A stretch of 64,000 nt of DNA, taken from IMG/VR virus record IMGVR_UViG_3300032334_001259, positions 248,001 to 312,000 of that record, one strand, 5' to 3'. Under the pieces are notes generated by a model, which saw nothing but the letters and a program-made list of their open reading frames with translations, was not told the origin of the DNA and did not search any database. The translations under genes and the position numbers were made by a program. Below, piece by piece: positions 21,509-43,920 of the stretch. Numbering within the stretch: position 1 is the stretch's first letter; the number at the start of each line of letters is the position of its first letter.

Positions 21509-22672
21509 ATGTTTTTCTCAATTTCTAAAAACAAAAAAGACAATTTTCCAAACCATTACGACTTTGATGATTACATCGTAAACACTGATGCTGGTTGGAA
21601 ACAGGTGACAGTTAATGGATCACAATTGCTGTATAAAGGTTATACGGATCTTAATAGTATTGAAGAAAATTTAGAACAAATTATTAAAGAAGAATCACCT
21701 ACATTTCTTGGTAATTTCTGTGTTATAGTAAAATTTAAAGAAACAAATAAAATTATTACAGATTTATACAGAGGGTTTCCAATAAGTTTCAATGAAAATG
21801 AAATTACAAATTTAGAAAATATTGGTCAACCTGTTTGGTCTAATAATTTACTTTCTTTTGATAATGAATTTAAGGTTGAAATTACAACTATAGATACTAC
21901 TGGAGAAATTGAAACTGACCTACTAAATGAAGAAGAAGCGTTAACTAAAGTTGATGATATATTATCGTTGAAAACACAAAATTTTTTAAAAAGTAATACA
22001 TTACCTATAAAAGTTTTTTTAAGTGGTGGTATAGATTCACTTCTTGTTTTCAGCTACATTCAAAAATACACCAATGACTATGAATTAATATTAAGCCAGC
22101 ACATTGATTTTGATTATTTTTGGCTTAAAAATTCATACACTTTACAAAAATATTGGGGGTATAAACAAATTCACCACTGGAATGAAGATTGTATATTAAC
22201 AAGTGGTGCGCCAGGTGATGAGTTTATGCTACGCAGTCCATCAACTGCAAATATGTTTTGTAGATTTTATAATCAGTCTATTCCTAAACTTCTTTCAAGT
22301 GGAAATCATAAGGATAGTTTACATTATGATTATTTTTCTCTTGATAAACATATGAAAGTTTTTTCACAACAAGAAAATGAAAATCACAAAATAGAAAATT
22401 TTACTGAACTGACAAAATTTTTATGCAATATAAATTTAAATGATTTCCAACATTGGCATTTGGGAAAAACATTAAATTGGACACCATTAAGAGATTTGAA
22501 TATTTTTAAGATAATGATTAGATTGCAGTTTGAAATAGCAGAAAAACAAATTATGGACAGTCATTTTAGTAAAAAATTAATAGAAAGAAATAATCCAGAT
22601 TTGTTAAAGTTATTGAGTGATGACAAAAATAGTGGCAATTACTTAAGCAATCTTGTTCACTTAATTAATTGA
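21509..22672 (+). CDS. asparagine synthetase-like (PP-loop ATP pyrophosphatase) protein
   Basis: FLSGGIDS and SGAPGDE motifs; degenerate GATase-like N-terminus. Confidence 0.65.
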   Translation: MFFSISKNKKDNFPNHYDFDDYIVNTDAGWKQVTVNGSQLLYKGYTDLNSIEENLEQIIKEESPTFLGNFCVIVKFKETNKIITDLYRGFPISFNENEITNLENIGQPVWSNNLLSFDNEFKVEITTIDTTGEIETDLLNEEEALTKVDDILSLKTQNFLKSNTLPIKVFLSGGIDSLLVFSYIQKYTNDYELILSQHIDFDYFWLKNSYTLQKYWGYKQIHHWNEDCILTSGAPGDEFMLRSPSTANMFCRFYNQSIPKLLSSGNHKDSLHYDYFSLDKHMKVFSQQENENHKIENFTELTKFLCNINLNDFQHWHLGKTLNWTPLRDLNIFKIMIRLQFEIAEKQIMDSHFSKKLIERNNPDLLKLLSDDKNSGNYLSNLVHLIN

Positions 22673-23775
22673 TATAAAAATTCGCTATAATCTTCTGCTT
22701 TAATACCTTTAACTTTATCCATCTTGTGGACAAAATCAATAAATTTTTTATGATTAACTTCATCATAATTGTTATTGGATAATATTTCTTTGTAATTCTT
22801 GATAGCATTGATTGCATTTATCTGCTGCATAGCTTCAATATTACTTGATAATAAAATTTTTATAGTTTCTTCTAAAGATTCAATTATTTTCTCTCTTAAC
22901 TCAATAGGTATAATTTCTAGTTTAAGGTGAGGTTCTTGAACAACTCCAAATGTAACTTGATGCCAATCATCTGATACAAATGCGATTAATTCTTTGATGT
23001 AAGAAATATTATATGCACTTACTGTAATATTAACACATGCTTCTACGTGTGAATATTTTTTGCATCTTAAATAATTTTCTTTAACTTTATCCCAGTTACT
23101 ACCAAATCTAATGTATTCGGAACTTTTTCCAACACTATCAATGCTAAAAACTAATTTAATTTTACCATTATAATTTTCAATAAAATCATAATCAATGAAA
23201 GTGCCATTGGTGAAAATAATAATATTTGCTTTTAAATTATTTTTTGCAAATGATAAAAACTTTAAACAATTCTTATCATAGAATGGTTCTCCACCCAATA
23301 CAACAACATCTTTAATTCTATGTTTTATTGAAGATAGTATTTCAAAATCAGTATGACTTGATGATATCTTTTTGTTTGGTATTATATCTGCAGAAACGTA
23401 ATATTGATAAACACGACTACTTGCTTCTGGCCAACAAGTTTGACACGCAAGATTACAAGTATTACCAGGTCTTATTTCTAATGTTATATCGTCGTCTGCA
23501 TAATTTCCGTATGAACTCGCTCCATTTAAACGAGTGCTATCACCACGTCCTTGGTCTTCTAATTTCTGACATTTGTAACATTCTTTTGGCCAGATATTAT
23601 TAGCGAGTTGTTCTCGTAAATGTTTTACATCATCTTTATCATGCCAGATTGATAAGTCATTGTTAGCTATCTGATTATTTTCTATCCAATTATTATCTGG
23701 CACAAATGAACAACAGGGGACTATAGTTTTATCATATTTTAAACTAAATCCGTGTGATAAAAATTTACATTCCAT
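22657..23775 (-). CDS. radical SAM protein with N-terminal twitch/SPASM-like domain
   Basis: CNLACQTC, GGEP and TNG; N-terminal PCC...C..C. Confidence 0.9.
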   Translation of the reverse strand: MECKFLSHGFSLKYDKTIVPCCSFVPDNNWIENNQIANNDLSIWHDKDDVKHLREQLANNIWPKECYKCQKLEDQGRGDSTRLNGASSYGNYADDDITLEIRPGNTCNLACQTCWPEASSRVYQYYVSADIIPNKKISSSHTDFEILSSIKHRIKDVVVLGGEPFYDKNCLKFLSFAKNNLKANIIIFTNGTFIDYDFIENYNGKIKLVFSIDSVGKSSEYIRFGSNWDKVKENYLRCKKYSHVEACVNITVSAYNISYIKELIAFVSDDWHQVTFGVVQEPHLKLEIIPIELREKIIESLEETIKILLSSNIEAMQQINAINAIKNYKEILSNNNYDEVNHKKFIDFVHKMDKVKGIKAEDYSEFLYQLIK

Positions 23776-23819: not shown

Positions 23820-24475
23820 ATGTCTTTCTTGTCACATATTTTTAACTTTGTAATATACCCAAAAGGTGCATGTGGTCAGCATTTATCTAATTTAATAAAT
23901 TTAGATGAAACTTTTAATAGTTCAGATTATGAATTAAACAAAGAGCAATTTTGTTTATATCTGGAAAACTTTTATGAAAATTACAATTTTAATACTAATG
24001 GATTATCAAAAAAAAACACACAAAATATCATACTATAATAGGTGGTCCTGAATGGTTATTAAATTTAAAAAAATTAGATTTATCATATAAAAATAGTGTG
24101 CATAAAGGACATATACGTAATTTTGAAACAAGTTGGTATAATAAAATAATTAAAACTTTCAAAAATTGTCGATATGTCATAATACAAATTACTACTGAAA
24201 GAAGCGATGAAATTTTAAAAAATCGTAAAAATAAAATGCCTACACTTGACGAAACTGAACATGAAGTAAATATGTATAATAATTTAAACTTACCTGTATT
24301 CAATGAATTACCAAATTTTGTTCATGAAAATATTATCACCATTGAATTAGAAGAAGTATATAAACCAGATATAAAAGATATTATAGAAAAAATTAATAAA
24401 AAATTTAATCTGAATATCCCAATTGATAAAGCACAATTCTTACATAAGTTTTGGTATAATTCAAATATCAGTTAG
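23820..24475 (+). pseudogene. frameshifted (or recoded) gene, possibly sulfotransferase/P-loop-like
   Basis: ORF1 ends at 24038; the -1 frame is open from 23999 to 24475; the junction is an A9 tract at 24008-24016. Confidence 0.55.
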
Positions 24476-24913
24476 TTCTTTATGACGACTTAAACGATCT
24501 TGCAAAGCATTTGTAAGTTGTTTTAAGGGGATTTTATTTTCACGATAGCCTTGGGCTATGAAGTTTATATATTTTTTAGTTGGTAAATGTTTATCATGGT
24601 AGTTACTGAACATTTGATAAGCATAGGCTTTGTAAATCTTTCCACCATAATTTACAGGAACTATAAGGTGCTTGTAATGACTGCGATGATCTTCCAATGC
24701 ATCCAATTTAGGAACAGCATCTTTTGGGATAGCGTATAACACACCTTGAATAGTAGAGTTTTTATCAGGACGTATATCACTAAAATGTTCAAGTGACATC
24801 TTATAACCATGAACACTTGCACGACCAAGAAGTCTTGCTTCTGGAACTCGTTTGTGCATTTCACCTACATTTGTATTGTGTCCGTAACTAAAATATAATA
24901 CTTCATCAGCCAT
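24461..24913 (-). CDS. gamma-glutamylcyclotransferase-like protein
   Basis: YFSYGHN, GVLY and LDALE motifs; start revised to MADEV. Confidence 0.8.
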   Translation of the reverse strand: MADEVLYFSYGHNTNVGEMHKRVPEARLLGRASVHGYKMSLEHFSDIRPDKNSTIQGVLYAIPKDAVPKLDALEDHRSHYKHLIVPVNYGGKIYKAYAYQMFSNYHDKHLPTKKYINFIAQGYRENKIPLKQLTNALQDRLSRHKELTDI

Positions 24914-24921
24914 AGTATTAC

Positions 24922-25497
24922 TTATTTTAAAAGTTGTGAGAATATAAAGTGACAACTTATACGATTTTCAATTAGACCAATGTCACCTATCATTTCATGC
25001 CATTGGTCATAATCGTTAACTTGTAAGTAACCTGTATTCATTTCATAGGGAAAGAAATATTTTGGTTTAGTTTTTTCACGGTAATAATAAAATTTAGTTC
25101 CCAGATCATTATCACTTTCACTCAAATATACTTGCATACTGATGGGAATATTAAAATAACCTTTTTGTTCAACTTCTACAGGATCAAAGTCACGGTGTAT
25201 TGGACTTTTATATCCATGCATATCTCGCCATAAACTTACAATGGTTCTATCTGGATATTGGAATTGCCAATTTAATTTTTCTTGTAATTCTGCGGCAATA
25301 CCAATGCTTATTCTTTTAAGTTGCGATAACTCCTTGCAACTTTGAAGTTTTAGTAGTTTTCTTGGAAATTCTTCTTGTTTAAGTTGAACATCCCATTCGT
25401 AATCATCCCAATTTGCTGTTTTACAAAATTCTACAATTTCCTGTGGAAATACATCCGTAACACGATACAGATTGCTTGCCACAGGAATTATATTCAT
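24922..25497 (-). CDS. 2OG-Fe(II) oxygenase-like protein
   Basis: HxD (IHRD), QVYL, GTKFY, distal WH and RIS motifs. Confidence 0.65.
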   Translation of the reverse strand: MNIIPVASNLYRVTDVFPQEIVEFCKTANWDDYEWDVQLKQEEFPRKLLKLQSCKELSQLKRISIGIAAELQEKLNWQFQYPDRTIVSLWRDMHGYKSPIHRDFDPVEVEQKGYFNIPISMQVYLSESDNDLGTKFYYYREKTKPKYFFPYEMNTGYLQVNDYDQWHEMIGDIGLIENRISCHFIFSQLLK

Positions 25498-26333
25498 TGG
25501 TCGTCTTCTGGTTTCCAACCCTTACAAATTGCTTTTTTATTTTCTGCAACTGCTTTAAAATCTACTGGCCAAAGTGGTGGTTTGTTCAACTTATTTGTGC
25601 CAGGTGGAACTGGAATAGAAAGACCTGTTGCAGCTTCAAGGTCTGCAATAGTAACTTGAACTTTAGTTAAATCATTGCCTTGATTTTCTGCTTGTGGAAA
25701 TAAGAAAGCCAATACTTCATTTGTCTGTGTATCAATTACAACTTTCCATAACTTATTTGGAACAGTAACCTTATTATTACCTATTGTTTTATCTTTACCA
25801 ACTGTGTAGACATCACCTGCATATATTACAAGAGTATGTTTACGACTGAATGTCCAAGCGCCTGTTGAAGTTTCAAGCAACTTCCAAATACCACGATTAA
25901 GACCAGGCAATTGTGGACTCATATTACTCATCAAAAATGATTCATATTCAACTTGTTGATCCCAAGATTGGTGTGCATCATTTGCAATATGTCCTTGGTC
26001 ATAACCACTGCCAGCATAATCACTTGGTGTGCTACGCTTATCAGCAGGTAGTGCGGCATCAGCAACAAATGCGTTGGTGCGCTTTACACAACCATTTACA
26101 TGTTCTGGTGTAATGTTCCAAGCTGCCCATAATGGAATCTTTGCTGCATTGTCGTGCATAATAAAATAACCTTGACGGCAAAGTGGTGTAGTGTCATGCT
26201 TACCACTGGCTACAATTTCACCATATGGCATAAATGCTTTACATACTTTTGGGTCTTGGTTTGGACGTTGGTCCCAAGCTAGTGCTAGAGAAGGTAGCAT
26301 AATTGCTACAAGTGCAATGATAAGTTTTTTCAT
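25494..26333 (-). CDS. secreted DNA/RNA non-specific endonuclease (NucA/EndA/EndoG family)
   Basis: signal peptide (SLALA); YDQGHIA (DRGH-like), SF.MSNMSPQ..LNRG.W..LE and VP...WKV motifs. Confidence 0.9.
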   Translation of the reverse strand: MKKLIIALVAIMLPSLALAWDQRPNQDPKVCKAFMPYGEIVASGKHDTTPLCRQGYFIMHDNAAKIPLWAAWNITPEHVNGCVKRTNAFVADAALPADKRSTPSDYAGSGYDQGHIANDAHQSWDQQVEYESFLMSNMSPQLPGLNRGIWKLLETSTGAWTFSRKHTLVIYAGDVYTVGKDKTIGNNKVTVPNKLWKVVIDTQTNEVLAFLFPQAENQGNDLTKVQVTIADLEAATGLSIPVPPGTNKLNKPPLWPVDFKAVAENKKAICKGWKPEDDQ

Positions 26334-26363
26334 TGATATTTCCTTTAATAATATTATTTACAT

Positions 26364-26397
26364 AAAAAAGCACCCATAGAAACTAATCTATGGGTGC
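26364..26397 (-). terminator. intrinsic terminator
   Basis: 11-bp stem GCACCCATAGA/TCTATGGGTGC, 6-nt loop, followed by U6. Confidence 0.85.
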
Positions 26398-26443
26398 CAA
26401 TTCTCACTTTATTATTCTATTATTTTTTATATTCTACACGTTA

Positions 26444-26542
26444 TAAGCTAGTTATTACATCTTATATTTTGTAAGTTTTTTAATTTTTAAGCTAGTTATT
26501 TTTCTAAAGTTAGTTTTCTACTGTTTCTATTTTAAGCTAGTT
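26444..26542. repeat. three exact 10-mers TAAGCTAGTT
   Basis: copies at 26444, 26488 and 26533 (periods 44 and 45). Confidence 0.85.
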
Positions 26543-26575
26543 GTAGGGGAGTTCCGCACTCGCCTACATTTTTAT

Positions 26576-26782
26576 TTAGCACTTAATACCGATATCACTC
26601 AACATTTCTTTCGCTTCACTACATTCTTGTTCTGTCAGTTCATCACTCATTGCACTTAAAAACAACAATTCAAGTTCAGTTTCATCAAGATTTGTTGTCC
26701 AATCAACAGGTTCTTCTTTTTGTGGCCAAGTTTGTTGAAAAGTAAACTTATAATTCCAAAAGTTTTGTTTATCGTTTTCCAT
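26576..26782 (-). CDS. hypothetical protein
   Basis: small acidic ORF. Confidence 0.55.
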   Translation of the reverse strand: MENDKQNFWNYKFTFQQTWPQKEEPVDWTTNLDETELELLFLSAMSDELTEQECSEAKEMLSDIGIKC

Positions 26783-26995
26783 TACCATGCCTCATAATCA
26801 GTTACATCTTTTTTAGCGATTTGTTGACCATCGTCATCAAAAGCGATAGCATTAATACTTTGACCAATGCCAGTAACATTTTCAGAAATAATCTTTACAC
26901 TTCTGGCAGTCATCATTAAATCACCATCAAGCCACTCTTTAATTTTAAAGAGTTCGTTAGTGAGAATGTGAACGCCAGTAGTGTTACGTTTTCTT

Positions 26996-27253: not shown

Positions 27254-27616
27254 TTATTTTAACGAATATTTTTCTAACATATACAGCATATAATGAAAGA
27301 CTTTTGCACCATATCTTATTTTAAACGTATAAGTTCCAGGTGTATCCATATATCCATAGTGATTATAAAGAATTTTGTTATCAGATGACCTATATACCCC
27401 AAATCTATCCAATAAAACTAAATGTGTATCATCACACATGATTTTTTTAATAATTACTTTACCATAATCTAATTTGACACAAATGTTTGTTATAGTTTTA
27501 GGATCATGTTCAAACACATATACTTTGACCCCATCATCTGATTCTTCAATACAGTTAGGAGTTAAAGAATATTTTGAATTATCAAATGTTTCGAGATATA
27601 ATTTTATTTTTTGCAT
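27254..27616 (-). CDS. hypothetical protein
   Basis: overlaps the end of the radical SAM gene. Confidence 0.65.
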   Translation of the reverse strand: MQKIKLYLETFDNSKYSLTPNCIEESDDGVKVYVFEHDPKTITNICVKLDYGKVIIKKIMCDDTHLVLLDRFGVYRSSDNKILYNHYGYMDTPGTYTFKIRYGAKVFHYMLYMLEKYSLK

Positions 27617-29117
27617 TGGTTTCTTTATATATTTTCATCAAGTTATCAACTTCGGCAACCCATTTATTAATTACAAAAGCATCATGTCTTTCATAATTTA
27701 AACTATCTGCAAATTCAATTAGTCTATACCAACGGTCAATTCTTACATCAAAAGTATTTTCTGGGTTAACAGTGCTTGTCCAAAATTTTTGATATAAGTG
27801 TAAATCAACATTATGTGTTAACCCATGAGATTTCATTATTTCTCGATTGGTAAAAAGAGGTGCATTTTCATTTAACATGAGTGTTGGACTTGCAACCCAT
27901 GTTATCATCTTATTTGCAGCAAGATGTGAATGTCTTTTAAACATTTCTAAAGTTTGTTGAAAATCTTCTTCGGTTTCTGTTGGATAACCAACAATCATTA
28001 ACCATATTTGTTTAATGCCAACCCTGTGCAAATTTTGAATACTATAATCAAGATCGTCATTATTGAATTTCTTTTTCATATCAAACCTTACACGTTCACT
28101 ACCGCTCTCTACACCAATGCTCCACCGTTTGCAACCTGCTCTTGCAGCCAAGTCAAAATCTTCTTCTGGCATTTGATGTTTTCCACGGAAAATAGCATAG
28201 CCTTGATAACTAATTTCATTGGGAATTTCTTTTGCTAAAATTTCATTGATGCGTCTATAATTGGTGACACTACCGTTTATTAAGTTATCTGTAAACTCTA
28301 CATTACGAATACCAGTATTTCTATAATAAGAAATTATTTCGTTTGCTACTTTTTCAGGATCTCTATATATAAATTTTGGCCAAAAACTTTCAACATCACA
28401 AAATGTGCATTTTCTTATACAACCTTTACTTCCTGTTACAACAAAATAAGGTTCTTGAACTATTCTCTCTAGGGTAGGATGGTTTTCAAGTTTTTTGTAT
28501 TTAGTTAAATCATAATCACTATATTTTGGAAGTGGAACTAAATCTAAATCTTCTTTAGTTTGTTGTGGAGATTCATAAATTCCTGTAATATTTTCTTTTA
28601 TTACTGTTATAATACTACTTTCCGCATCACCTACTACAACAGTGTCAGCAATACCATTCTCAATAAAATTGACATAGTGTTTTTTAGAATTTGTAGTTAA
28701 ACCACTTGTAACTTCTAAACCCTTACCACCAGCAATAATTTTAATATGGGGGTAATATCTTCTTATCAAATAACTTATAATAAAAGAAAAATCTAAACTT
28801 TCACTTGTAAAAATACTTAAACCAATCCATTCTGGATTATGTGTGATTACTAAATTGTTTAAAAATTTTTTAGTAAATTTTAATATATCTAAAAATAATC
28901 TACGTGGAAGTTTAAAGTCATACACATATCCAATGCAAAAAGTATTTTTTACCCCGATCCAATGGGGATTATCTATAAATTTTTCAAGAAAAAGTGTATT
29001 AAAATCAACAGCAGTTGCAGTTATGCCTGCATCATTTAAGCAAGCACTTAATAAAATCGGCGCAACTTGAGGATGTGGGTGTATATAAGGAACACTTAAT
29101 ATTACTACTTTAGACAT
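27582..29117 (-). CDS. B12-binding radical SAM enzyme
   Basis: N-terminal cobalamin-binding-type domain (IGLSIF, GG, GDAE); KGCIRKCTFC; GVESGS; VGYPTE. Confidence 0.9.
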   Translation of the reverse strand: MSKVVILSVPYIHPHPQVAPILLSACLNDAGITATAVDFNTLFLEKFIDNPHWIGVKNTFCIGYVYDFKLPRRLFLDILKFTKKFLNNLVITHNPEWIGLSIFTSESLDFSFIISYLIRRYYPHIKIIAGGKGLEVTSGLTTNSKKHYVNFIENGIADTVVVGDAESSIITVIKENITGIYESPQQTKEDLDLVPLPKYSDYDLTKYKKLENHPTLERIVQEPYFVVTGSKGCIRKCTFCDVESFWPKFIYRDPEKVANEIISYYRNTGIRNVEFTDNLINGSVTNYRRINEILAKEIPNEISYQGYAIFRGKHQMPEEDFDLAARAGCKRWSIGVESGSERVRFDMKKKFNNDDLDYSIQNLHRVGIKQIWLMIVGYPTETEEDFQQTLEMFKRHSHLAANKMITWVASPTLMLNENAPLFTNREIMKSHGLTHNVDLHLYQKFWTSTVNPENTFDVRIDRWYRLIEFADSLNYERHDAFVINKWVAEVDNLMKIYKETNAKNKIISRNI

Positions 29118-32160: not shown

Positions 32161-33432
32161 TCAGTCGCCCACTGCACCATCATAGTTCCACTTAAATGAA
32201 CCCCATAGTGAACGGGCTTCATCTACTTTGGTCTGGCTACCAAGATGCTTGCGGATCAAATCCATAACCATCTTACGAGTATTCTTACCATCAAACTTAC
32301 CAAACACAATACCAGGTGCAAACTGGTCTTGTGCCTTGATAGTAGGCATCCACTCTAACGCATAACGCTTGCGGTCAAGACCATGAGCAACAACCGTGTC
32401 AAAATAGTGATCATATGACTTCACGGTTTGGTTTACACCAATCCAAAAATCGGTTTCAAAATCTTCAACACGCTTGCGGTCATCATCCAACATAAACGCC
32501 TTTGCATCATCCATCTTTTCTTCAACAAGAAGTTCAATGATGTTCTTCTCGTGAAGCAGATGATCCTTGGTCTTATGAATACGCAAATACCACTCACCCT
32601 TGCACTTGACCATGTGACCATCGTCAAAGCGTATGATATAACCTTCAATGCCTTCTGCATCTTTGGTTTCATCCATAAGGTGTGACATAGATTGTGCAGA
32701 ACCTTGGTAAGTCTGCACCACTTCTATGTCAAACATATCACCGTATTCTTGCAACCATTGTAGGCTTGCATACACGCCGCTATCCTTACGACGAGCAGCA
32801 ATCAACACAAGACGATCTACAGGATAGTCCACAACAATACGTTGCTTACGTGAACACCATTCAAAGATAGGAGTGTAACCTGTCTTGTTTTCACACCAAC
32901 GAGCAAATTGCTCATACTGTGGATGACGAGCAACAAACTCTTCTGCTTGCATAGAGACTTCGGTCAAACCCATCTTGGTTCCCCAACGGATGCTACCATC
33001 AGGCATGTAGACAGGCGTGATCATAGAGCCGTCTAACTTCTCCAAGATAACATGTGGCTGCGTGAAGTCAATCACACCAAACTGCGTTTCATCACGTTCA
33101 CCAATGTTGAAGAACTTGTGCAGACGGCGTGACATGATAGAGCCGTCCTTGTGGAACAGCATACCACGACACTCACGACGAATAGCCGCAAGGTTGACAG
33201 ATTCAGGGCAACGCTGTGAACCACAGTGATCAATATCCTTGATCAATTGCTTGCAACCAGGACACCAGTATTCATCTTCCGTAACAGGAGGAAAGGTATC
33301 GGTCATGGATACCATGTAGTTGACTACATAGCCCCAATCACGTTCTGCAATGATAAACTCATCACGACCTTCAATCGCAGGACGAACCTGATCAAGGTGG
33401 GTGATGCGTGGGAAATCATACTTCATAGCCAT
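32161..33432 (-). CDS. RNA ligase 1 (T4 Rnl1/RnlA-like)
   Basis: RECRG, KFFN, EKLDGS adenylation motif, FEW, EGYI and KCK..WY; promoter TTGACA-16-TATTAT. Confidence 0.92.
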   Translation of the reverse strand: MAMKYDFPRITHLDQVRPAIEGRDEFIIAERDWGYVVNYMVSMTDTFPPVTEDEYWCPGCKQLIKDIDHCGSQRCPESVNLAAIRRECRGMLFHKDGSIMSRRLHKFFNIGERDETQFGVIDFTQPHVILEKLDGSMITPVYMPDGSIRWGTKMGLTEVSMQAEEFVARHPQYEQFARWCENKTGYTPIFEWCSRKQRIVVDYPVDRLVLIAARRKDSGVYASLQWLQEYGDMFDIEVVQTYQGSAQSMSHLMDETKDAEGIEGYIIRFDDGHMVKCKGEWYLRIHKTKDHLLHEKNIIELLVEEKMDDAKAFMLDDDRKRVEDFETDFWIGVNQTVKSYDHYFDTVVAHGLDRKRYALEWMPTIKAQDQFAPGIVFGKFDGKNTRKMVMDLIRKHLGSQTKVDEARSLWGSFKWNYDGAVGD

Positions 33433-33458: not shown

Positions 33459-33671
33459 TTAGCGGTTTGTCAAGAGATCAATTCGGGTCTTAAGTACTTC
33501 TAATTCAAAGAGTTTTCCAAAGGCTTTACGGGCTTCCCGTTCACATTGGTCCTCTAACCTGTCAAAATGGTCTACTAACAGGTAGGCTTGATAGGAATAA
33601 AATACTAAAATAGCACATATTCCCATGCCCAATAACCAAGCCAAAAATAGCGACAAATAATATAATATCAT
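33459..33671 (-). CDS. small membrane protein
   Basis: N-terminal TM helix; promoter TTGACA-16-TATGAT (33678-33705) ends 6 nt before the ATG. Confidence 0.65.
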   Translation of the reverse strand: MILYYLSLFLAWLLGMGICAILVFYSYQAYLLVDHFDRLEDQCEREARKAFGKLFELEVLKTRIDLLTNR

Positions 33672-35620
33672 GCTGCTATCATAGCATGATCTTGGGGTTT
33701 GTCAACCTTTAAATTTTCGGTTTTAATATGGGCAATACCAAAGTTTTCACGGCGTTTCCAGTAGATATATTCCAAATACTGTGCTTCGGTAAGATTAACA
33801 TCGCCATTATACTTGAATGTTACATGAACTGGTGTTTCAAGTTTAGTATTGTGCAGTAGATAATTGTAGAAATCGTAGTTGTATGTTCCAGTTACAGGAT
33901 AGTTTTTAAGTGTATGATAATCAATTACACTCTTGCGTTGGAAGTCAATCAATTCATCAATAAACTTCTTGTCAACTTTGTATGTCTTACGCACAAATGC
34001 TTCAACCAAATTAAGAACATGTTCGATCTTATTATTAGCAACAATACTAATAATAATCTTCCACATCAAACTCATGCGACGAATAGTAAAGTTATTAACC
34101 ATCATCTTTTCATTACCACCAGTCCAACTATCATAGAAGTCAGCGATAGATTGGAACTCATTGCGCATAAACTCATCGCCTTGAAAATATTCATACAAGT
34201 TTTCATAGAAGTCAGCATAACTTACGCCAAACTTTTTGTTCAATACACGTGCAACATAACTTGTAATACCATTGGTATGCAGACCCATAAGATAACAACT
34301 GAATATAAGTGACTTCTTAAAATCTTCTGGTGGCATATCTTTTGTTGCAACAGTGATTTCCACGCTCTCTTGCAAATCATCAAAGTTGTTTACACCATGG
34401 AAATAATCTGGTGCAAGGATTGTTTTAATTTGGAACTCATCACGTTGCGCCAAGTTAAGTTCAGCATTTTCAAGCAACATACTGATCCATACTTCAATAC
34501 CGTTGTGATTACCTGCTTCAAAGATGCGATAGAAGTTCTTGCGCCAAGTATCATATGTTTCACCTGGCAAACCAAGAATGAGTTCACTATAAACAGGAAT
34601 ATTTGCTTCTTCACAAAGTTTATAAATTTCACCTACACGGTTGATTTCAAGGTTCTTACGCTTAATATTAGCCAACACATCTTCATCAAGACTTTGGAAT
34701 GATACTGTTAAACCATAATTTGGGAAGTTACTGTTGATAAACTTGCTTACGATCTCAACAACTTCTTTCTTCTGGTTCTTGGCATAGTTAATAACATAGT
34801 TACGTGGATAACCATACTTGTAATTGGTTTCAATAAGTTTATCCGCAATCAACAAATCACGTTCTGGAAAAATACCAAAGTTAGCATCACAAATTGTAAA
34901 ATGGTCTAACTTGTTTTGTCCCATCCATTCAATTTCAGCAAATACACGTTCTAAATCAAACTGCTTAATCTTGCTTTGTGTGATACTACCCCAATCACAG
35001 AATGTGCACATATATGGGCAACCACGATTGGTTTCTAACATACCATTCCAAGTAACAAGTGGATTGTCTGCCATAATCTTTTGGAATAATCCGCTTGTAT
35101 ATGGACTTGGAATTTCATCAAGTTTATCAATACGTTTGCTTACACCAGTATCAACACGTTTACCATTATCGTTTACAAGAATACCCTTGACACTTTTTAA
35201 ATCGTCACGGTTAAGTAACATGTTTTTAAAACTGATTTCACCTTCATTCTTAATGACTACATCCATAAATGGATAACGTTCAAAGATGTCCATCTTTTCA
35301 ATCTGTGGTTCTGGACCACCAAATACAATCAATATATGCGGATATAATTTCTTAATAGTTTTAGCCAGTTTGTAATTATAATTACGATTCCAAATATATG
35401 TAGAGAAACCTACAATATCTGCATCTTTAAGTTTTTCAACAGCGACATCAATATCGTCTCGTCTCCATAACATTTCACCAAGTTCATATTGGTCAGTTAC
35501 TTCACTAAACTGACTTACATAACTCCACAGCAGTCCTACGCTGTAGGGTAGATAAAATGCGTTAAGGTGTGTTGGACCTTGTTGGAAGTTGACACTTACG
35601 AAGCTGATTTTCTTTTTCAT
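33668..35620 (-). CDS. B12-binding radical SAM enzyme
   Basis: GFSTYIWN, GGP, ETNRGCPYMCTFCDWG, DANFG and LILGLPGET motifs. Confidence 0.92.
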   Translation of the reverse strand: MKKKISFVSVNFQQGPTHLNAFYLPYSVGLLWSYVSQFSEVTDQYELGEMLWRRDDIDVAVEKLKDADIVGFSTYIWNRNYNYKLAKTIKKLYPHILIVFGGPEPQIEKMDIFERYPFMDVVIKNEGEISFKNMLLNRDDLKSVKGILVNDNGKRVDTGVSKRIDKLDEIPSPYTSGLFQKIMADNPLVTWNGMLETNRGCPYMCTFCDWGSITQSKIKQFDLERVFAEIEWMGQNKLDHFTICDANFGIFPERDLLIADKLIETNYKYGYPRNYVINYAKNQKKEVVEIVSKFINSNFPNYGLTVSFQSLDEDVLANIKRKNLEINRVGEIYKLCEEANIPVYSELILGLPGETYDTWRKNFYRIFEAGNHNGIEVWISMLLENAELNLAQRDEFQIKTILAPDYFHGVNNFDDLQESVEITVATKDMPPEDFKKSLIFSCYLMGLHTNGITSYVARVLNKKFGVSYADFYENLYEYFQGDEFMRNEFQSIADFYDSWTGGNEKMMVNNFTIRRMSLMWKIIISIVANNKIEHVLNLVEAFVRKTYKVDKKFIDELIDFQRKSVIDYHTLKNYPVTGTYNYDFYNYLLHNTKLETPVHVTFKYNGDVNLTEAQYLEYIYWKRRENFGIAHIKTENLKVDKPQDHAMIAA

Positions 35621-35630
35621 GATAAAATAT

Positions 35631-36302
35631 TTATTGTCCTGTGATTTCACATAATTGTTTTATTGTAGTTATTTTACTATCTTGATTACATAAGTCAATA
35701 TACTTTTGTGTATCACGACTCCATTCAGCACCTGTCCACCATTCAAAACCTGATAACTTTGCTTTGTAAATAGAACCTTTTTCATATCCACTACCTATAT
35801 AGAGATAATTTAATCCTAATTGTGCTGCGCAGTTTACTTCAAAGTTTAACATATCTAATCCAAACTTATTTTTTGGATGCGGTATGTAGGCATTAAATTG
35901 ACTTTCTAATCCACCCGTATATTTTGCAAACTTTGTGAAACCAACTAATTCATCATTTACATAATACTCCATCCAACGATCACGTTCATTTGTTACAAAT
36001 GGGTCATAGATTGGTGGATATTTTTTGCTTGTAATATAAGTTTGCCAGATTTGTTTGTATAATTCTATATTTGGATTATTTTCTATAAAAAATATACGGC
36101 AGTTTTGTTGTTGATAATTTAGTTTCCAATTCGCAATACAAATACGTGTGCTACGTGACTGATACCATAGGTCATTATATAGCAACCAACCATTCGCTAA
36201 TGCTTCACCTTCTTCATGTGGTTCACATTGCAGATTTACATTATATAATTGTATACTGTTGTTTTCTTGTTGACCGTAATAGTGGTCATAAGTAATCTTC
36301 AT
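35631..36302 (-). CDS. aminoacyl-tRNA-protein transferase-like (Bpt/ATE1, GNAT fold)
   Basis: AL.NGW...W.QSRSTRI N-part; LNYLYIGSGY....YK..L.GFE C-terminal motif. Confidence 0.6.
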   Translation of the reverse strand: MKITYDHYYGQQENNSIQLYNVNLQCEPHEEGEALANGWLLYNDLWYQSRSTRICIANWKLNYQQQNCRIFFIENNPNIELYKQIWQTYITSKKYPPIYDPFVTNERDRWMEYYVNDELVGFTKFAKYTGGLESQFNAYIPHPKNKFGLDMLNFEVNCAAQLGLNYLYIGSGYEKGSIYKAKLSGFEWWTGAEWSRDTQKYIDLCNQDSKITTIKQLCEITGQ

Positions 36303-38738: not shown

Positions 38739-38815
38739 TGGCGATCTCACGTGGACTCGAACCACGACTCTGCCGCTTAGAAGGCGGCCGCTTTGTCCAG
38801 TTAAGCTATGAGACC
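38739..38815 (-). tRNA. tRNA-Arg(UCU)
   Basis: cloverleaf; anticodon arm GCCGC-CTTCTAA-GCGGC; GTTCGAG T-loop; encoded CCA. Confidence 0.95.
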
Positions 38816-39172
38816 ATCTAAATTAAATTCATCTTCCAAATATATTTTATCTACTTTTTGTATAAAGCTATTTGATAATCTTTTTGGTATAATTGTTTTA
38901 CATATTCTTATACTAACATCATGTGTTATTTTGTCAACTGCATTATTATGTCTTTGATCAATTACTAAACATAAAGTTTTACTAGCCTTATATATTTTAC
39001 TAAAAGTTGCCACACGGTTAGTAATGTATTCACTATAACCTACTTGAATTACTCCACCTTTGTAGGGTGTGTCTTGTGATACTTCAAACTCATCAATAAC
39101 TTTTAGATTTGTATCTTGACGAAGTAATTGTGAAATTTTTTCTATATCTTCAACAAGAAATAAAATTTTCAT
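38801..39172 (-). CDS. hypothetical protein (stop codon inside tRNA-Arg)
   Basis: 123-aa ORF coupled to the mtnN-like gene. Confidence 0.65.
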   Translation of the reverse strand: MKILFLVEDIEKISQLLRQDTNLKVIDEFEVSQDTPYKGGVIQVGYSEYITNRVATFSKIYKASKTLCLVIDQRHNNAVDKITHDVSIRICKTIIPKRLSNSFIQKVDKIYLEDEFNLDGLIA

Positions 39173-39702
39173 ACTAATATTTCTAAAAATTTTTCCGCAC
39201 CCTTGTGCATATTTTCTTTCCAGTGTGCACTTGCATCTTCATCTGCAAAATCAGTCATGTATTTGTAGCATTCAAATTGTTTATTAAATCTTTTACATAC
39301 TTTTGCAATAGCATATGCTTCCATATCAACAGCGTCAGTTAATAATTCAGGTTTAGATTTTACAAAGTTATCACCAGTGCTCAATGTGAACACACTATCA
39401 TTCAGAACAATAGGACCACCATCATCTTCAAATGGTGTATAACCTAACTGTGTAAGTGGTCTTGTATCCATATCACGTTGATAAACAGTTCCAATATTGA
39501 TTAACCGTCCAATAATATCTTTATTAAGTGCACCCGCTGTTCCATAGTTTATAATTTTAGAACAATTAGGATCTAATGCACAAATCTTCGTTGCGGCAAT
39601 AGTTGCATTTATTTTTCCAACACCAGTATAAACTATGCTTATACCAAGTGAATCAAACTTAATTGGAAATTCTGGTTCAAGTGCAACTAATATGTAAATC
39701 AT
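39169..39702 (-). CDS. mtnN: MTA/SAH nucleosidase-like (PNP_UDP_1 family)
   Basis: ALEPE, GVGKINA, NYGTAG, TGDNF, DMEAYA and TDFAD motifs. Confidence 0.85.
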   Translation of the reverse strand: MIYILVALEPEFPIKFDSLGISIVYTGVGKINATIAATKICALDPNCSKIINYGTAGALNKDIIGRLINIGTVYQRDMDTRPLTQLGYTPFEDDGGPIVLNDSVFTLSTGDNFVKSKPELLTDAVDMEAYAIAKVCKRFNKQFECYKYMTDFADEDASAHWKENMHKGAEKFLEILV

Positions 39703-39716
39703 AATAAAAAAAATAA

Positions 39717-39802
39717 TGGCGGAGCGTATAGGAATCGAACCTATTCAACCTTTCGGTTGTACACATTAGCAGTGTGCTGCATTACCGGCCTGCCCACGCT
39801 CC
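39717..39802 (-). tRNA. tRNA-Ser(GCU)
   Basis: anticodon arm GCACA-CTGCTAA-TGTGT; long variable arm CAACC-GAAA-GGTTG; G73; CCA. Confidence 0.95.
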
Positions 39803-40497
39803 ATTATTTTACTTATATCATCCTTTTTCCATACTGTCAACTTATTTTTAAACTGTTGCCATTTACAACGGTCTAAATCTGTTTCATAACCCTTAACTTC
39901 TAAATACCCACCCAATTCTTCAACATAAAAGTCTGGAGTATAGTGACTTATTTTACCAGATAAATTTACATAAGCAAATCTTTCAGTGTTTCTTTTCCAA
40001 TTCCAATTTTGGGAATCCATATATTGTGCAGCTTTAAGTTCCCAAGTTCCATCTAACAAAACTTCACCAGCAATAGGACTAATGTATTTTATTTTTTTGC
40101 ATCTACCCGCTTTTGGCATCCATCCAGTTTCATATCTTGATAAAATAATTTCTCTATGCCTGTCTCTAAATTTTTGTTTTTTTTCTTCGCTAAAAGTATG
40201 CCAATTTGTTTTTCCTAAATTTGCATTACGTAATTTTTCTTTTTGAATTATAGCACCTTGCGGTCCAAATATTTCATCGTATGTTTTTCCTTTAAGACTT
40301 GTTCCATTCGATGAACCTTTAGGATGTCCATTTTTCCAATAATTATTGCCTAAATCTTTTCTTAAATTTTTTATTTTTGAACGATTTATTTCTTTCATTC
40401 CATTACAGGAACTTGTAGATTTACAACAACAATTTTTTCCATTTTTTAATTTGTATTTTGCTTCTGTTCCGCAACCATAATCACATAAATCTGTCAT
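39766..40497 (-). CDS. free-standing putative homing endonuclease (PD-(D/E)xK with NUMOD-like N-terminus)
   Basis: CDYGCG/CCC N-terminus, KGKTYDEIFG, YTPDFY...YLEVKG; lies between two tRNAs. Confidence 0.75.
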   Translation of the reverse strand: MTDLCDYGCGTEAKYKLKNGKNCCCKSTSSCNGMKEINRSKIKNLRKDLGNNYWKNGHPKGSSNGTSLKGKTYDEIFGPQGAIIQKEKLRNANLGKTNWHTFSEEKKQKFRDRHREIILSRYETGWMPKAGRCKKIKYISPIAGEVLLDGTWELKAAQYMDSQNWNWKRNTERFAYVNLSGKISHYTPDFYVEELGGYLEVKGYETDLDRCKWQQFKNKLTVWKKDDISKIMERGQAGNAAHC

Positions 40498-40545
40498 ATA
40501 ATTATTTATACAAAATAATTAAAAAGGTGCTTTTAACCTCTAAAT

Positions 40546-40619
40546 TGGTAGGCGATGACAGAATCGAACTGCCGTAGCCGCCGTGTAAAAGCGGAGTTTT
40601 ACCATTAAACTAATCGCCC
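40546..40619 (-). tRNA. tRNA-Val(UAC)
   Basis: anticodon arm CCGCT-TTTACAC-GGCGG; TTCGATT T-loop; CCA; TTGACA promoter upstream. Confidence 0.93.
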
Positions 40620-40640
40620 CAATAGTTTATATATATCATA

Positions 40641-41228
40641 TTATCCAATTTTGTCAACTATTATTTTAAATAATTTTTCTGCCATTATTTCATGTGCAAT
40701 TTCATCAGGATGACCATCAGGCAGTTTATGTGGATATGTTATGCTACACATGTTTTCACTATTAAACCAAATATAATTGTTGTCAATATTTTGACAGTAA
40801 TGGTTAATAGGCATTACATCAAAGAATACATAAGGAACTTTATTGTGATTAAGATATGCAGAAAAAAGTTTTACTTGATTTATGAACTTTTCATAATAAT
40901 ATAATTCATCATAATAATCATGCCAGAATATATTTTCAAACTCTGTTAAACCACGGCGATTTGGAATGGTTGTAAATTTTTTACCAGTTTTATTATCTTT
41001 AAATTCTACACGACTTGGCTGTGTAAATCCGCAGACAACAAAGCTATTATGTAAATCTTTTTCAATTATACTTTGTATAATATGTTCATTACCCATGCCC
41101 TCTCGTGCAAGATTAATGACACTTAAGTTTAATTTTTCAGCCAGCAAATACGGCCAAGAATTAATTGCGTTCTTTAATCCATATCCACTGGTAAAACTAC
41201 AACCACTACATATTAATTTTGAAAACAT
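40641..41228 (-). CDS. SGNH/GDSL-like hydrolase or acyltransferase
   Basis: GCSFT, NLAREGMGN and DGHP...H motifs. Confidence 0.75.
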   Translation of the reverse strand: MFSKLICSGCSFTSGYGLKNAINSWPYLLAEKLNLSVINLAREGMGNEHIIQSIIEKDLHNSFVVCGFTQPSRVEFKDNKTGKKFTTIPNRRGLTEFENIFWHDYYDELYYYEKFINQVKLFSAYLNHNKVPYVFFDVMPINHYCQNIDNNYIWFNSENMCSITYPHKLPDGHPDEIAHEIMAEKLFKIIVDKIG

Positions 41229-42022
41229 TCAACAATCTTTGGTAATATAAGTTGTAACCAATCAATATGTGCATTGTGACCAGGATGATTACCACATTTT
41301 GGATAATCTTTTGCCCATTCGTTAAATGCTGCATCACGATACCAATGAGTCCAGTCTAGATCATATAATCCACTATTGATAATATCATTTGGCTGTGGTT
41401 TAAAAAGTTCGTCACTAGCACTGCAAAAGAAATACGGTATGTTTCTTTGTTTACAAAACATTTCTAGAAACATCATTTCTTTTAATGAATTATAATTATG
41501 ATAGCTGTAATCACCAGTTACTTTATAAAAACTGTCACTTGCATGTACAATTCCAATTTCATTTAATTTATTATGTTGTTCAAGAAAAAATTTTCTTTGT
41601 TTTTCATCTAATCCGTTTGGGAAAAATTCCATCTTTTCATCAAAAGATAAACCATGCCATGCGTTAAAATTTATCCAATAATCGTCAATATCAAAACGTG
41701 CTGCAACAATTGGATTTTTAACTATAGTATTGTATGGGTGCATGTTGCGAATTCGTATTTCACTGCGATGAGTGTATGTCCACATAACCGCAACACATAA
41801 TTCTTTATCTTTATTATCATTAATTGCTTTTATAATACGGCGGCTAATAGTATTATTTGCACCACCTGGTTTAGCAACACAAATATATTCCATATTATAC
41901 TGCCTTGCTAAAAGAGCACTCCAAGTTTGTTGACTTGGAGTGTGTTCTGTGCTACTAAATTTATCATCACCTAGTTCACTTCCCCAAGTGAAACTATCAC
42001 CGCCTGCAATAAGGGTTGGCAT
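41213..42022 (-). CDS. SGNH/GDSL-like hydrolase or acyltransferase
   Basis: GDSFTWG, PGGANN, WT...R and HPG..AH motifs. Confidence 0.75.
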   Translation of the reverse strand: MPTLIAGGDSFTWGSELGDDKFSSTEHTPSQQTWSALLARQYNMEYICVAKPGGANNTISRRIIKAINDNKDKELCVAVMWTYTHRSEIRIRNMHPYNTIVKNPIVAARFDIDDYWINFNAWHGLSFDEKMEFFPNGLDEKQRKFFLEQHNKLNEIGIVHASDSFYKVTGDYSYHNYNSLKEMMFLEMFCKQRNIPYFFCSASDELFKPQPNDIINSGLYDLDWTHWYRDAAFNEWAKDYPKCGNHPGHNAHIDWLQLILPKIVECFQN

Positions 42023-42636
42023 TAGTCACCTAATACTGAACGTGCTTTTTCCCAAAGATGTGTACGTTCTTCAAGACCAATGGTTCCACCATTAATAATC
42101 TTTGTGCACTTTACAATGTCACCAGTATCAGCTACTTCATTGCAACCATTTTGTTGAAAGAACCAACCAGCACTACGTGCTGCACCTTCTGGTGTAGCAA
42201 GATAATCACTGTTTTCTACAAGGTCCATGCCTAATGCTTCACCACATGCAGTGTAGTTATTCTTACCAGTTAACTGAATTAAACCACGACCACGAAAACG
42301 GAAACCATCGCCGCTGTGTTCATCACCATTACCCATACGTGAAGCATAAACACGATTAGCAATCTTTTCTGGTTGCTTTGCAAAATCATTTGGATCTACA
42401 TCACGGAAATATTTTGGAAATATCTTTGTAAGTGTTTCTGCTTTGTAGTTTAAATTTTCACTTACAGCACTGAACATACCACTTTCATGTGCACACTGTG
42501 CAAGAAACATAGCACAACGAGCGGGTGTATTAATTTCAAATTCATGCATTGCTTCATTAAGTGCATCACAATATTTCTCTAAATTCTCACCTTTTGCTTG
42601 TGGAAAAATTTCTTGTAGTTGTTCAAAAGTTGCCAT
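42022..42636 (-). CDS. glycoside hydrolase family 19 endolysin
   Basis: FLAQCAHES, ENLNY, RGRGLIQLTGKNNY and TK.INGG..GL.ER motifs. Confidence 0.92.
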   Translation of the reverse strand: MATFEQLQEIFPQAKGENLEKYCDALNEAMHEFEINTPARCAMFLAQCAHESGMFSAVSENLNYKAETLTKIFPKYFRDVDPNDFAKQPEKIANRVYASRMGNGDEHSGDGFRFRGRGLIQLTGKNNYTACGEALGMDLVENSDYLATPEGAARSAGWFFQQNGCNEVADTGDIVKCTKIINGGTIGLEERTHLWEKARSVLGD

Positions 42637-42700
42637 TTTATATTTCCTTTTTGATTGTTATCAGTATTTACCATTCACCAACCTTCATATAAATATCATT

Positions 42701-43827: not shown

Positions 43828-43843
43828 TTTAAAACTTTTTAAT

Positions 43844-43920
43844 TGGTGCCCACGGTCGGATTTGAACCGACACTGTGGCGATTTTAAGTCGCCTTTCTCT
43901 ACCTGTTGGAATACGTGGGC
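43844..43920 (-). tRNA. tRNA-Leu(UAA) with short variable loop
   Basis: GGCGA-CTTAAAA-TCGCC; 5-nt variable loop; GTCGG-TTCAAAT-CCGAC; A73; CCA. Confidence 0.92.

What the first reader, a model, noticed from the sequence alone, without database searches (positions are those of the whole stretch)
26364..26578. Candidate ~205-nt RNA with three periodic AACUAGCUUA motifs
Seen: the largest non-coding gap in the region reads as a complete transcription unit on the minus strand. It has a TAAATA motif, a 5' hairpin TGTAGG-C-GAGT-GCGGA-ACTC-C-CCTACA, an A-rich body with exact AACTAGCTTA copies at 44/45-nt spacing separated by unrelated sequence, and an 11-bp terminator. Inference: a protein-sponge RNA (Hfq/CrcZ-like or antitoxin-like decoy) or a precursor cut at the repeats into ~45-nt units. 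Alternatively, the near-palindromic 10-mers are DNA-binding sites in AT-rich DNA (origin or operator).
Basis: partly seen in the sequence, partly recalled or inferred. Interest (0 to 1): 0.7.

Follow-up and report, generated by a model that had tools for sequence, protein, structure and literature searches.

The report
Late phage small RNA with repeated boxes
The gap holds a probable ~200-nt non-coding RNA gene of an uncultured freshwater T4-like giant phage, whose conserved part is a short box (AACUA-G/A-C) repeated 2-7 times and also found in a second small RNA of the same phage. It matches no described RNA family, and its expression and partner are untested.

Summary
Three exact AACTAGCTTA copies lie on the minus strand, 45 and 44 nt apart. 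They sit between a TAAATA motif with a 5' hairpin and a 12-bp terminator, and no ORF is present.

The window belongs to a 338-kb T4-like jumbo phage. There TAAATA behaves as the late promoter: 118 of 193 sites lie just upstream of ORF starts.

Sixteen distinct versions of the unit occur in related freshwater phage contigs. All keep the promoter and the terminator, and most keep a 5' hairpin of varying sequence. All carry 2-7 boxes AACUA(G/A)C, 70 in the forward orientation and none reversed. Box spacing ranges from 4 to 44 nt, so the 44/45 periodicity is local and not a feature of the family. The spacers are unrelated to one another.

The flanking genes change on both sides, so the unit stands alone. 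A second, structured ~130-205-nt RNA elsewhere in these phages has the same promoter, hairpin and box at its 5' end.

No Rfam family matches. The tested features of CsrB, CrcZ, ToxI, CRISPR, iteron and MotA-promoter systems are not met.

Best reading: a late, stable, trans-acting small RNA whose single-stranded boxes are its recognition sites. They most likely pair with a host RNA, or else soak up a protein. No RNA run was listed, so transcription is untested. The partner and the host are unknown.

The parts
26573..26578 (-). TAAATA, inferred T4-type late promoter (-10) of the RNA; overlaps the TAA stop of the upstream 70-aa ORF
   Evidence: 118 of 193 TAAATA sites in the genome lie within 100 nt upstream of ORF starts on the coding strand, peaking at -30 to -20. 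The motif is kept in all 16 family versions, including those with a different upstream gene.
26542..26568 (-). 5' hairpin starting about 5 nt after TAAATA; its 3' arm ends on the first A of box 1
   Evidence: dG -13.3 kcal/mol, z -3.35. In 13 of 17 distinct variants from the two RNA families a hairpin of different sequence ends exactly at the box.
26533..26542 (-). Box 1, AACTAGCTTA
   Evidence: Exact match. Core AACUA(G/A)C is conserved in relatives.
26509..26515 (-). Variant box AACTAAC, inside the conserved block ACAGUAG..AAAACUAACUUU
   Evidence: alignment A1.
26488..26497 (-). Box 2, AACTAGCTTA
   Evidence: Exact match.
26471..26477 (-). Degenerate box AACTTAC
   Evidence: Read from the sequence.
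26444..26453 (-). Box 3, AACTAGCTTA
   Evidence: Exact match.
26364..26398 (-). Intrinsic terminator: 12-bp stem, 6-nt loop, U run. Inferred 3' end of the RNA.
   Evidence: The stems differ among relatives but keep pairing.
26355..26360 (-). Second TAAATA, the nuclease gene's own late promoter. It is not part of the RNA and marks the unit's downstream limit.
   Evidence: TAAATA lies roughly 15-40 nt (mostly ~20-25) upstream of the ATG in most nuclease relatives examined, down to ~51-54% identity; none is seen upstream of L247/L248.
25494..26333 (-). Downstream neighbour: secreted DNA/RNA non-specific endonuclease (279 aa, signal peptide)
   Evidence: PF01223, E 4e-43. In some relatives it is separated from the RNA unit by an inserted ~210-aa ORF.

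Best explanation
The gap is an autonomous gene for a ~200-nt non-coding RNA of a T4-like jumbo phage. It is transcribed late from the TAAATA promoter and ends at the intrinsic terminator.

The RNA begins with a hairpin that would shield its 5' end. An A-rich, largely unstructured body follows, displaying several single-stranded copies of the box AACUA(G/A)C. These boxes are the working part, the sites by which the RNA recognises a partner in trans.

The preferred sub-version is base pairing with a host RNA that carries 5'-GYUAGUU-3'. The RNA would then be a multi-seed regulator or an RNA sponge. The second, structured small RNA of the same phage would be its sibling, since it carries the same hairpin-plus-box 5' module.

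Shown: the anatomy, its conservation, its independence from neighbouring genes, the shared module, and the absence of coding potential.

Inferred: that it is transcribed, where its ends lie, and that the boxes act in RNA.

Guessed: the partner.
For: Promoter:
- TAAATA is depleted overall but concentrated 20-30 nt upstream of ORF starts.
- The genome encodes a T4 gp23-type capsid protein.

Conservation against a diverged background:
- Four-fold degenerate sites of the adjacent nuclease gene are only ~53% identical between the window and its relatives.
- All 16 distinct elements nevertheless keep promoter, boxes and terminator, and most keep a 5' hairpin.
- Box number (2-7) and spacing (4-44 nt) vary, but the box core does not.
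- Box orientation is 70 forward and 0 reverse.

RNA-level structure:
- The 5' hairpins have different sequences but the same fold, and they end at the box.
- The terminators, and the UUCG hairpin of the second RNA, change on both sides while keeping pairs.

Autonomy:
- The upstream gene differs in L223 and L231.
- A ~210-aa ORF is inserted downstream in L012, L228, L234 and L236.

Sibling RNA:
- It lies at G000:C1:41213-41417 on the minus strand and in about 12 relatives.
- A covariance model built from the relatives finds the window genome's copy at E 7e-9.
- In most relatives it carries a single box inside a 16-nt invariant single-stranded stretch beside a scaffold and a terminator. That is the usual layout of a base-pairing seed.
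- The G/A change in the box would keep pairing with a U.
Against: - No RNA data. No RNA run holding the sequence could be listed.
- No complementary target is enriched near phage start codons: 7 seen against roughly 3-5 expected. No longer complementary site exists in the phage genome. Any target would have to be in an unknown host.
- Predicted accessibility of the boxes is no higher than that of the rest of the body.
- Some box variants (AACUAAA, AACUAGA) do not fit simple wobble pairing.
- One subgroup (L010, L225, L227) has lost the 5' hairpin and carries a terminator-like hairpin between the TAAATA and the boxes.
Confidence: 0.45

Rival explanations
1. Protein sponge. This is the same late RNA, but the boxes are binding sites for a sequence-specific single-strand RNA-binding protein of the host or the phage. 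Several copies per molecule titrate that protein late in infection, as CsrB/RsmZ do for CsrA or CrcZ for Hfq/Crc.
For: - There are several identical single-stranded motifs in an unstructured A-rich body, and copy number varies among close relatives from 2 to 7. That is typical of sequestering RNAs.
- Spacing is free.
- No RNA target was found within the phage.
- UAG triplets are enriched, 8 against 2.3 expected.
Against: - There is no GGA, and AANAANAA is not enriched beyond composition. CsrA and the CrcZ mode are therefore excluded and no candidate protein is known.
- The sibling RNA usually carries only one box, which is not a sponge layout.
- No RegA or gp32 family gene was detected, although those two searches rang in no control genome and so do not show absence.
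Confidence: 0.3
2. Cis element of a neighbouring gene. The stretch would be a long 3' UTR of the upstream 70-aa gene, or a leader or attenuator controlling the nuclease, rather than an independent RNA.
For: - The TAAATA overlaps the upstream stop codon, so read-through from upstream must also cover the region.
- The unit lies next to the nuclease in most relatives.
- The terminator sits just before the nuclease gene.
Against: - The nuclease has its own TAAATA after the terminator in most relatives examined, including distant ones that lack the element.
- In four relatives another ORF separates the element from the nuclease.
- The upstream gene is replaced in others.
- The same 5' module heads an unrelated RNA next to a tRNA gene.
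Confidence: 0.08
3. Processing substrate. The boxes would be endoribonuclease cut sites that chop the RNA into ~45-nt pieces, as in a type III antitoxin or pseudo-ToxI decoy, or would act as bait for a sequence-specific host RNase.
For: - The promoter, repeats, terminator, gene order recalls toxIN loci (from knowledge of that family).
- The window's own spacing of 44/45 nt equals the cptI repeat length (from memory).
- The box is under-represented in the rest of the genome, 72 against 112 expected.
Against: - The units are not repeats: spacers score no better than shuffles and no tandem array is found.
- The periodicity is absent in relatives.
- The downstream gene is Endonuclease_NS with a signal peptide, not ToxN, AbiQ or CptN, and it can be separated from the element.
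Confidence: 0.07
4. DNA-level sites. The boxes would be direct-repeat binding sites for a DNA-binding protein (iterons, operator, packaging or partition site) in AT-rich DNA.
For: The repeats are direct, in an AT-rich intergenic stretch. The 44/45 bp spacing is about four helical turns.
Against: - Spacing in relatives ranges from 4 to 44 bp with no phasing.
- Every box has the transcript's orientation.
- The boxes are bracketed by a promoter and a terminator.
- The adjacent hairpins co-vary as RNA stems do.
- There is no GC-skew turn at the site.
- No MotA gene is present, and the box is not found upstream of other genes, so it is not a promoter element.
Confidence: 0.04
5. No function. The region would be slippage-prone, low-complexity intergenic DNA in which the box persists by recent duplication.
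For: Duplicated 12-13-nt units (AAAACTAACTTTG) and indels are evident among relatives.
Against: The box core is invariant across lineages whose synonymous sites are near saturation. It recurs in a second, unrelated and otherwise highly conserved RNA.
Confidence: 0.04

Closest known systems
Sibling base-pairing sRNAs that share a seed (e.g. OmrA/OmrB, Qrr1-4; from general knowledge)
   Same: Two separate small RNA genes in one genome share a short invariant single-stranded sequence beside a scaffold and end in an intrinsic terminator.
   Different: One of the two carries the shared sequence 2-7 times. The genes are phage late genes. No target, chaperone or host is known, and there is no sequence or Rfam relationship.
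CsrB/RsmX/Y/Z and CrcZ protein-sequestering RNAs
   Same: A non-coding RNA with several copies of a short single-stranded motif, copy number differing between relatives, and a terminator at the 3' end.
   Different: The motif is AACUA(G/A)C. There are no GGA triplets, and AANAANAA is not enriched. The boxes are not presented in hairpin loops. No Rfam match reaches threshold.
Type III antitoxin arrays (ToxI, CptI, TenpI) and phage pseudo-ToxI
   Same: The order promoter, repeats, terminator, gene, and the ~45-nt spacing in this one genome.
   Different: Only 7-10 nt repeat. The spacers are unrelated and the period is not conserved. The downstream gene is a secreted Endonuclease_NS, not a ToxN-type RNase, and it can be separated from the element.
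T4 small stable RNAs C and D of the tRNA region (from memory; function unknown)
   Same: Small non-coding RNAs of a T4-type phage with no assigned function. The sibling RNA here also lies beside a tRNA gene.
   Different: No sequence comparison was made. The RNAs here have their own late promoter and terminator rather than being cut from a tRNA precursor.
Prophage-encoded sponge sRNAs (AgvB, AsxR; from memory)
   Same: Phage-borne small RNAs proposed to act by titrating another RNA.
   Different: Those mimic one target site of a known host sRNA in a known host. Here the partner is unknown and the site is multiplied.

Membership tests
T4-type late transcription unit | A (TA)TAAATA -10 element without a -35, used genome-wide just upstream of late genes | tested here: met
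   118 of 193 TAAATA sites lie within 100 nt upstream of ORF starts. A is preferred before the motif. A T4 gp23-type capsid gene is present. The sigma factor gp55 itself was not searched for.
T4-type late transcription unit | A transcript actually starting a few nt downstream of the motif, late in infection | not testable with these tools
   No RNA run was listed for the sequence.
Any described RNA family (Rfam 15) | A covariance-model match at or above the gathering score | tested here: not met
   Only tRNAs pass in the window. The best sub-threshold match in the gap is PyrG_leader at 34 bits against a cut-off of 65, and it covers the terminator. Only the tRNA passes at the sibling locus.
CsrB/Rsm sponge | Multiple GGA motifs, mostly in hairpin loops | tested here: not met
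   There are 0 GGA in the 144-nt body.
CrcZ-type Hfq/Crc sponge | Several AANAANAA (CA) motifs beyond what composition gives | tested here: not met
   3 observed against 3.5 in shuffles. Runs of four ARN triplets: 4 against 2.0, P 0.17.
Type III toxin-antitoxin (ToxIN/CptIN/TenpIN) | A tandem array of near-identical 34-45-nt RNA repeats | tested here: not met
   Spacer pairs score like shuffles. No 44/45-nt array is found. The period is not kept in relatives.
Type III toxin-antitoxin (ToxIN/CptIN/TenpIN) | A ToxN/AbiQ/CptN-type endoribonuclease gene directly after the terminator | tested here: not met
   The downstream gene is PF01223 Endonuclease_NS with a signal peptide. In four relatives another ORF intervenes.
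CRISPR array / RNA anti-CRISPR | Repeats of about 24-37 nt separated by unique spacers | tested here: not met
   The repeat is 7-10 nt. The only CRISPR-DR hit has E 8.5.
Iteron origin / operator | Phased or palindromic DNA sites; a skew turn or replication genes at the site | tested here: not met
   Spacing is 4-44 bp and unphased. All 70 boxes are co-oriented. Cumulative GC skew shows no turn near 26.4 kb.
MotA-type middle promoter | A MotA activator gene, and a MotA-box-like element about 12 bp upstream of a -10 at many genes | tested here: not met
   No MotA_activ match. The box is essentially confined to two non-coding loci.
Hfq-dependent trans-acting sRNA | Binding to Hfq, and target pairing through a conserved single-stranded seed | not testable with these tools
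   The layout is compatible: a terminator with six U's, a conserved single-stranded stretch and an A-rich body. The host and its Hfq are unknown.

The most novel reading that the evidence does not exclude
The two box-bearing late RNAs are an RNA-based counter-defence. Their single-stranded AACUA(G/A)C boxes would act as decoys that occupy a host sequence-specific RNA-targeting immune effector or sensor late in infection, for example an abortive-infection endoribonuclease. The multi-box RNA would be the high-capacity version. This would explain the fast turnover in copy number and the under-representation of the box elsewhere in the phage genome.
Probability: 0.1. Interest if true: 0.8.

Novelty: new variant of a known kind. 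Interest (0 to 1): 0.5.

Why it matters
Few small RNAs of lytic phages have a known role, and for T4-type phages the small stable RNAs have stayed unexplained for decades.

Here two RNA genes of one uncultured giant-phage lineage share a promoter, hairpin and box module. One of them multiplies the box. That gives a concrete, mutable handle: a 7-nt box on which to test what a phage gains from a late non-coding RNA, whether host regulation, titration of a factor, or counter-defence.

The work also gives an empirical late-promoter rule (TAAATA) for this freshwater jumbo-phage group, which helps annotate its many unknown genes.

Tried and rejected
- Genome-wide promoter motif. The 10-mer occurs 4 times and shorter cores are not enriched upstream of genes. 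Rejected.
- MotA-type middle promoters. No MotA gene. Rejected.
- Resemblance, recalled from memory, of AAUAACU to the T4 gp43 operator loop. The phage PolB gene has no box or hairpin upstream. Dropped.
- RegA or gp32 as partner. No Pfam match, but those searches had no positive control, so this is inconclusive.
- Phage-internal antisense targets. GYUAGUU near start codons occurs 7 times against about 3-5 expected, and no longer complementary site exists. No support.
- Wider distribution. Three pattern scans of IMG/VR returned only this clade plus chance hits and unrelated tandem repeats.
- Cultured relatives by capsid similarity (Yersinia fHe-Yen9-04, Pseudomonas MIJ3) show no box clusters.
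- The phage collection has no nucleotide match to the locus.
- Host hint. The one genome-collection scan gave a single 3.7-kb contig of an unnamed gammaproteobacterial assembly. Not informative.
- Complementarity of the box to the D-arm of the neighbouring tRNA-Ala (9 pairs, seen by eye in the sequences). My own rough estimate puts this at chance level, and the tRNA differs in relatives. Dropped.
- Box accessibility by partition-function folding. No difference from the rest of the body.
- RNA runs. None was listed. Read laying was not used because only DNA runs were available.

Full report
**1. What is in the sequence**

On the minus strand the 242-nt gap lies between a 70-aa ORF (26576-26788) and a 279-aa gene (25494-26333). 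It reads as follows:
- TAAATA at 26578-26573, overlapping the upstream stop codon.
- A hairpin at 26568-26542.
- Three exact AACTAGCTTA copies starting at 26542, 26497 and 26453, so 45 and 44 nt apart.
- Two degenerate copies, AACTAAC at 26515-26509 and AACTTAC at 26477-26471.
- A 12-bp terminator at 26398-26369 with a U run.
- A second TAAATA at 26360-26355, a ribosome-binding site and the ATG at 26333.

The hairpin is stable, with dG -13.3 kcal/mol and no shuffle out of 200 as good. The body is 55% A. No ORF longer than 26 aa exists in the gap.

The 10-mer occurs four times in the 338-kb genome, three of them here. Box counts in body shuffles are 4 observed against 0.02 expected.

The three spacers are no more similar to each other than shuffled sequence, and no tandem array is detected. 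The copies are isolated boxes, not repeat units.

**2. Whose genome, and is TAAATA a promoter?**

The window is G000:C1:248001-312000 of a 338,435-bp IMG/VR virus record with 35.5% GC. Freshwater metagenomes hold it.

The genome encodes a T4 gp23-type capsid protein at E 8e-99. Its nearest cultured relatives by capsid DNA are jumbo phages of Yersinia, Pseudomonas, Escherichia and Klebsiella, at about 69% identity.

TAAATA occurs only 193 times on both strands. Of these, 118 lie within 100 nt upstream of ORF starts on the coding strand, peaking at -30 to -20. A is preferred before the motif at such sites and T at the others. Most nuclease relatives examined, down to about 51-54% identity, carry TAAATA roughly 15-40 nt (mostly ~20-25) before the ATG; none is seen upstream of L247/L248.

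TAAATA therefore behaves as the T4-type late promoter of this group. This is an inference from position, not a measured start site. The TAAATA at 26578 has no ORF behind it for 239 nt.

**3. Relatives**

Fetching loci by the neighbouring nuclease is unbiased with respect to the element. It gave 16 distinct versions of the element from IMG/VR and JGI metagenome contigs.

All of them have TAAATA, 2-7 boxes AACUA(G/A)C (a few read AACUAAA or AACUAGA), a terminator whose stem differs but pairs, and then the nuclease promoter. Most also have a 5' hairpin. At least four hairpin sequences give the same fold.

Box spacing ranges from 4 to 44 nt, so the 44/45 period is peculiar to this genome. The closest relative, L222 (nuclease 96% identical), already has a different 5' hairpin and two AACUAAC plus one AACUAGC. 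All 70 boxes are in the transcript's orientation and none is reversed.

Four-fold degenerate sites of the nuclease gene are only about 53% identical between the window and the 76-80% relatives. An invariant 7-mer at several positions is therefore under selection.

The unit is autonomous:
- The upstream gene is different in L223 and L231.
- In L012, L228, L234 and L236 a ~210-aa ORF sits between the element's terminator and the nuclease promoter.

One subgroup (L010, L225, L227) lacks the 5' hairpin but keeps two boxes and the terminator.

**4. A second RNA with the same 5' module**

Genome-wide, AACTA[AG]C is under-represented, at 72 against 112 in shuffles. Yet 10 of the 11 intergenic copies are on the minus strand, and only two clusters exist: the finding, and C1:41237-41359.

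That second place is another TAAATA-to-terminator unit without an ORF, next to a tRNA-Ala gene.

In about 12 relatives it is a ~130-nt RNA built as follows:
- TAAATA.
- A hypervariable 5' hairpin.
- AACUA(G/A)CUUACCCCCUG, single-stranded and almost invariant.
- A hairpin closed by a UUCG loop.
- A second hairpin.
- A terminator.

The terminator shows two pairs changed on both sides. One more variant changes both sides of the UUCG hairpin. A covariance model built from the relatives finds the window genome's copy at 45 bits, E 7e-9.

In 13 of 17 distinct variants from the two families, the predicted 5' hairpin ends exactly on the first A of the box. In many the junction reads CCUAUAACUAGCUUA in both families.

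Two unrelated RNA bodies thus share one module of late promoter, 5' hairpin and box. This is the strongest argument that the box works in RNA.

**5. Known things it is not**

- Rfam 15 gives only tRNAs at threshold. Sub-threshold hits cover the terminator.
- There is no GGA, and AANAANAA is not enriched, so it is not a CsrA or CrcZ type.
- It is not a tandem array, and the downstream gene is PF01223 Endonuclease_NS with a signal peptide, so it is not a type III toxin-antitoxin locus.
- The repeat is too short for CRISPR.
- There is no MotA gene, and the box is not upstream of other genes, so it is not a promoter element.
- There is no skew turn at the site and no phasing. The box is not palindromic, and co-orientation is strict. 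DNA sites are therefore unlikely.
- Box clusters are absent from two cultured capsid relatives.

**6. How it most likely works**

The layers of evidence differ.

Shown: a selected, non-coding, strand-specific unit bounded by a promoter-like and a terminator-like signal. Its conserved parts are a 5' stem and the repeated boxes.

Inferred:
- It is a late transcript of about 200 nt, from roughly 26566 to 26364.
- A 5'-terminal hairpin and a 3' terminator hairpin would make it stable.
- The boxes lie in a weakly structured A-rich body.

Guessed: the partner.

I favour base pairing with a host RNA carrying GYUAGUU, for three reasons. The sibling RNA usually has one box inside a long invariant single-stranded stretch next to a scaffold and terminator, which is the classic seed layout. 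Two RNAs sharing a seed is a known pattern. The G/A alternation would keep a pair with U. The multi-box RNA would then be a multi-seed regulator or an RNA sponge.

A protein sponge is nearly as good. It explains the copy-number turnover and free spacing better, but it has no candidate protein.

No phage-internal target exists, and the host is unknown.

The less likely readings are a cis element of a neighbouring gene, a processing substrate, DNA sites, and no function. Their evidence is given under the rival explanations.

**7. Novelty and limits**

The kind of element, a small RNA acting through repeated short single-stranded motifs, is known. This box, the two-family arrangement and the late-promoter drive in a T4-type jumbo phage match nothing in Rfam or in the literature searched.

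The main weakness is the complete lack of expression data: no RNA run was listed. The virus is also uncultured, so function rests on comparative anatomy alone.

Noticed in passing
G000:C1:41213-41417, minus strand (outside the window; locus L001:1395-1600): A second non-coding unit, running from TAAATA to a terminator, with three AACUA(G/A)C boxes. It lies just upstream of a tRNA-Ala gene that has its own sigma-70-like promoter. In relatives it is a ~130-nt, highly conserved, structured RNA with a UUCG hairpin.
   Followed up: yes
whole genome G000; in the window e.g. 26355-26360: TAAATA is strongly depleted overall (193 sites on both strands) but sits 20-30 nt upstream of about 110 ORF starts. 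This gives a usable late-promoter rule for this uncultured jumbo-phage group. TTGACA is also enriched 40-60 nt upstream of ORFs, which would fit early promoters read by the host.
   Followed up: partly
window 25494-26333, minus strand: A secreted DNA/RNA non-specific endonuclease (PF01223) with its own late promoter. It is widespread in freshwater T4-like phage contigs: 152 relatives in IMG/VR and 195 in JGI metagenomes. One 53-kb contig appears twice (L010 and L236, different coordinates), suggesting two copies in one genome.
   Followed up: partly
L012:3380-4000 (also L228, L234, L236): A ~210-aa AT-rich ORF (begins MLQPDHDIFFVHGTGG) is inserted between the RNA's terminator and the nuclease promoter in some relatives. 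It looks like a mobile or recently acquired gene and was not identified.
   Followed up: no
window 22657-23775, 27582-29117, 33668-35650, minus strand: Three large radical-SAM-type genes within 13 kb. Two have Pfam radical SAM matches, one of them with a weak B12-binding match. The third was judged only by eye from its sequence. Nearby are a gamma-glutamyl cyclotransferase-like gene (24461-24955) and a T4 Rnl1-type RNA ligase (32161-33432).
   Followed up: partly
window 38742-43920; whole genome: Four tRNA genes in the window and 23 in the genome. ARAGORN also calls a 'permuted tmRNA' at C1:330-694, which was not checked and may be spurious.
   Followed up: no
L225 upstream region: In the hairpin-less subgroup a second TAAATA directly abuts the first box (TAAATAACTAGC). 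A terminator-like hairpin follows the upstream gene, so the promoter may have moved in this lineage.
   Followed up: no
window 26400-26545, minus strand: UAGAA occurs five times in the body, and UAG is enriched overall (8 against 2.3 in shuffles). AUGUA(A/G) also recurs before boxes, as if the internal units arose from copies of the 5' module that lost the hairpin.
   Followed up: partly
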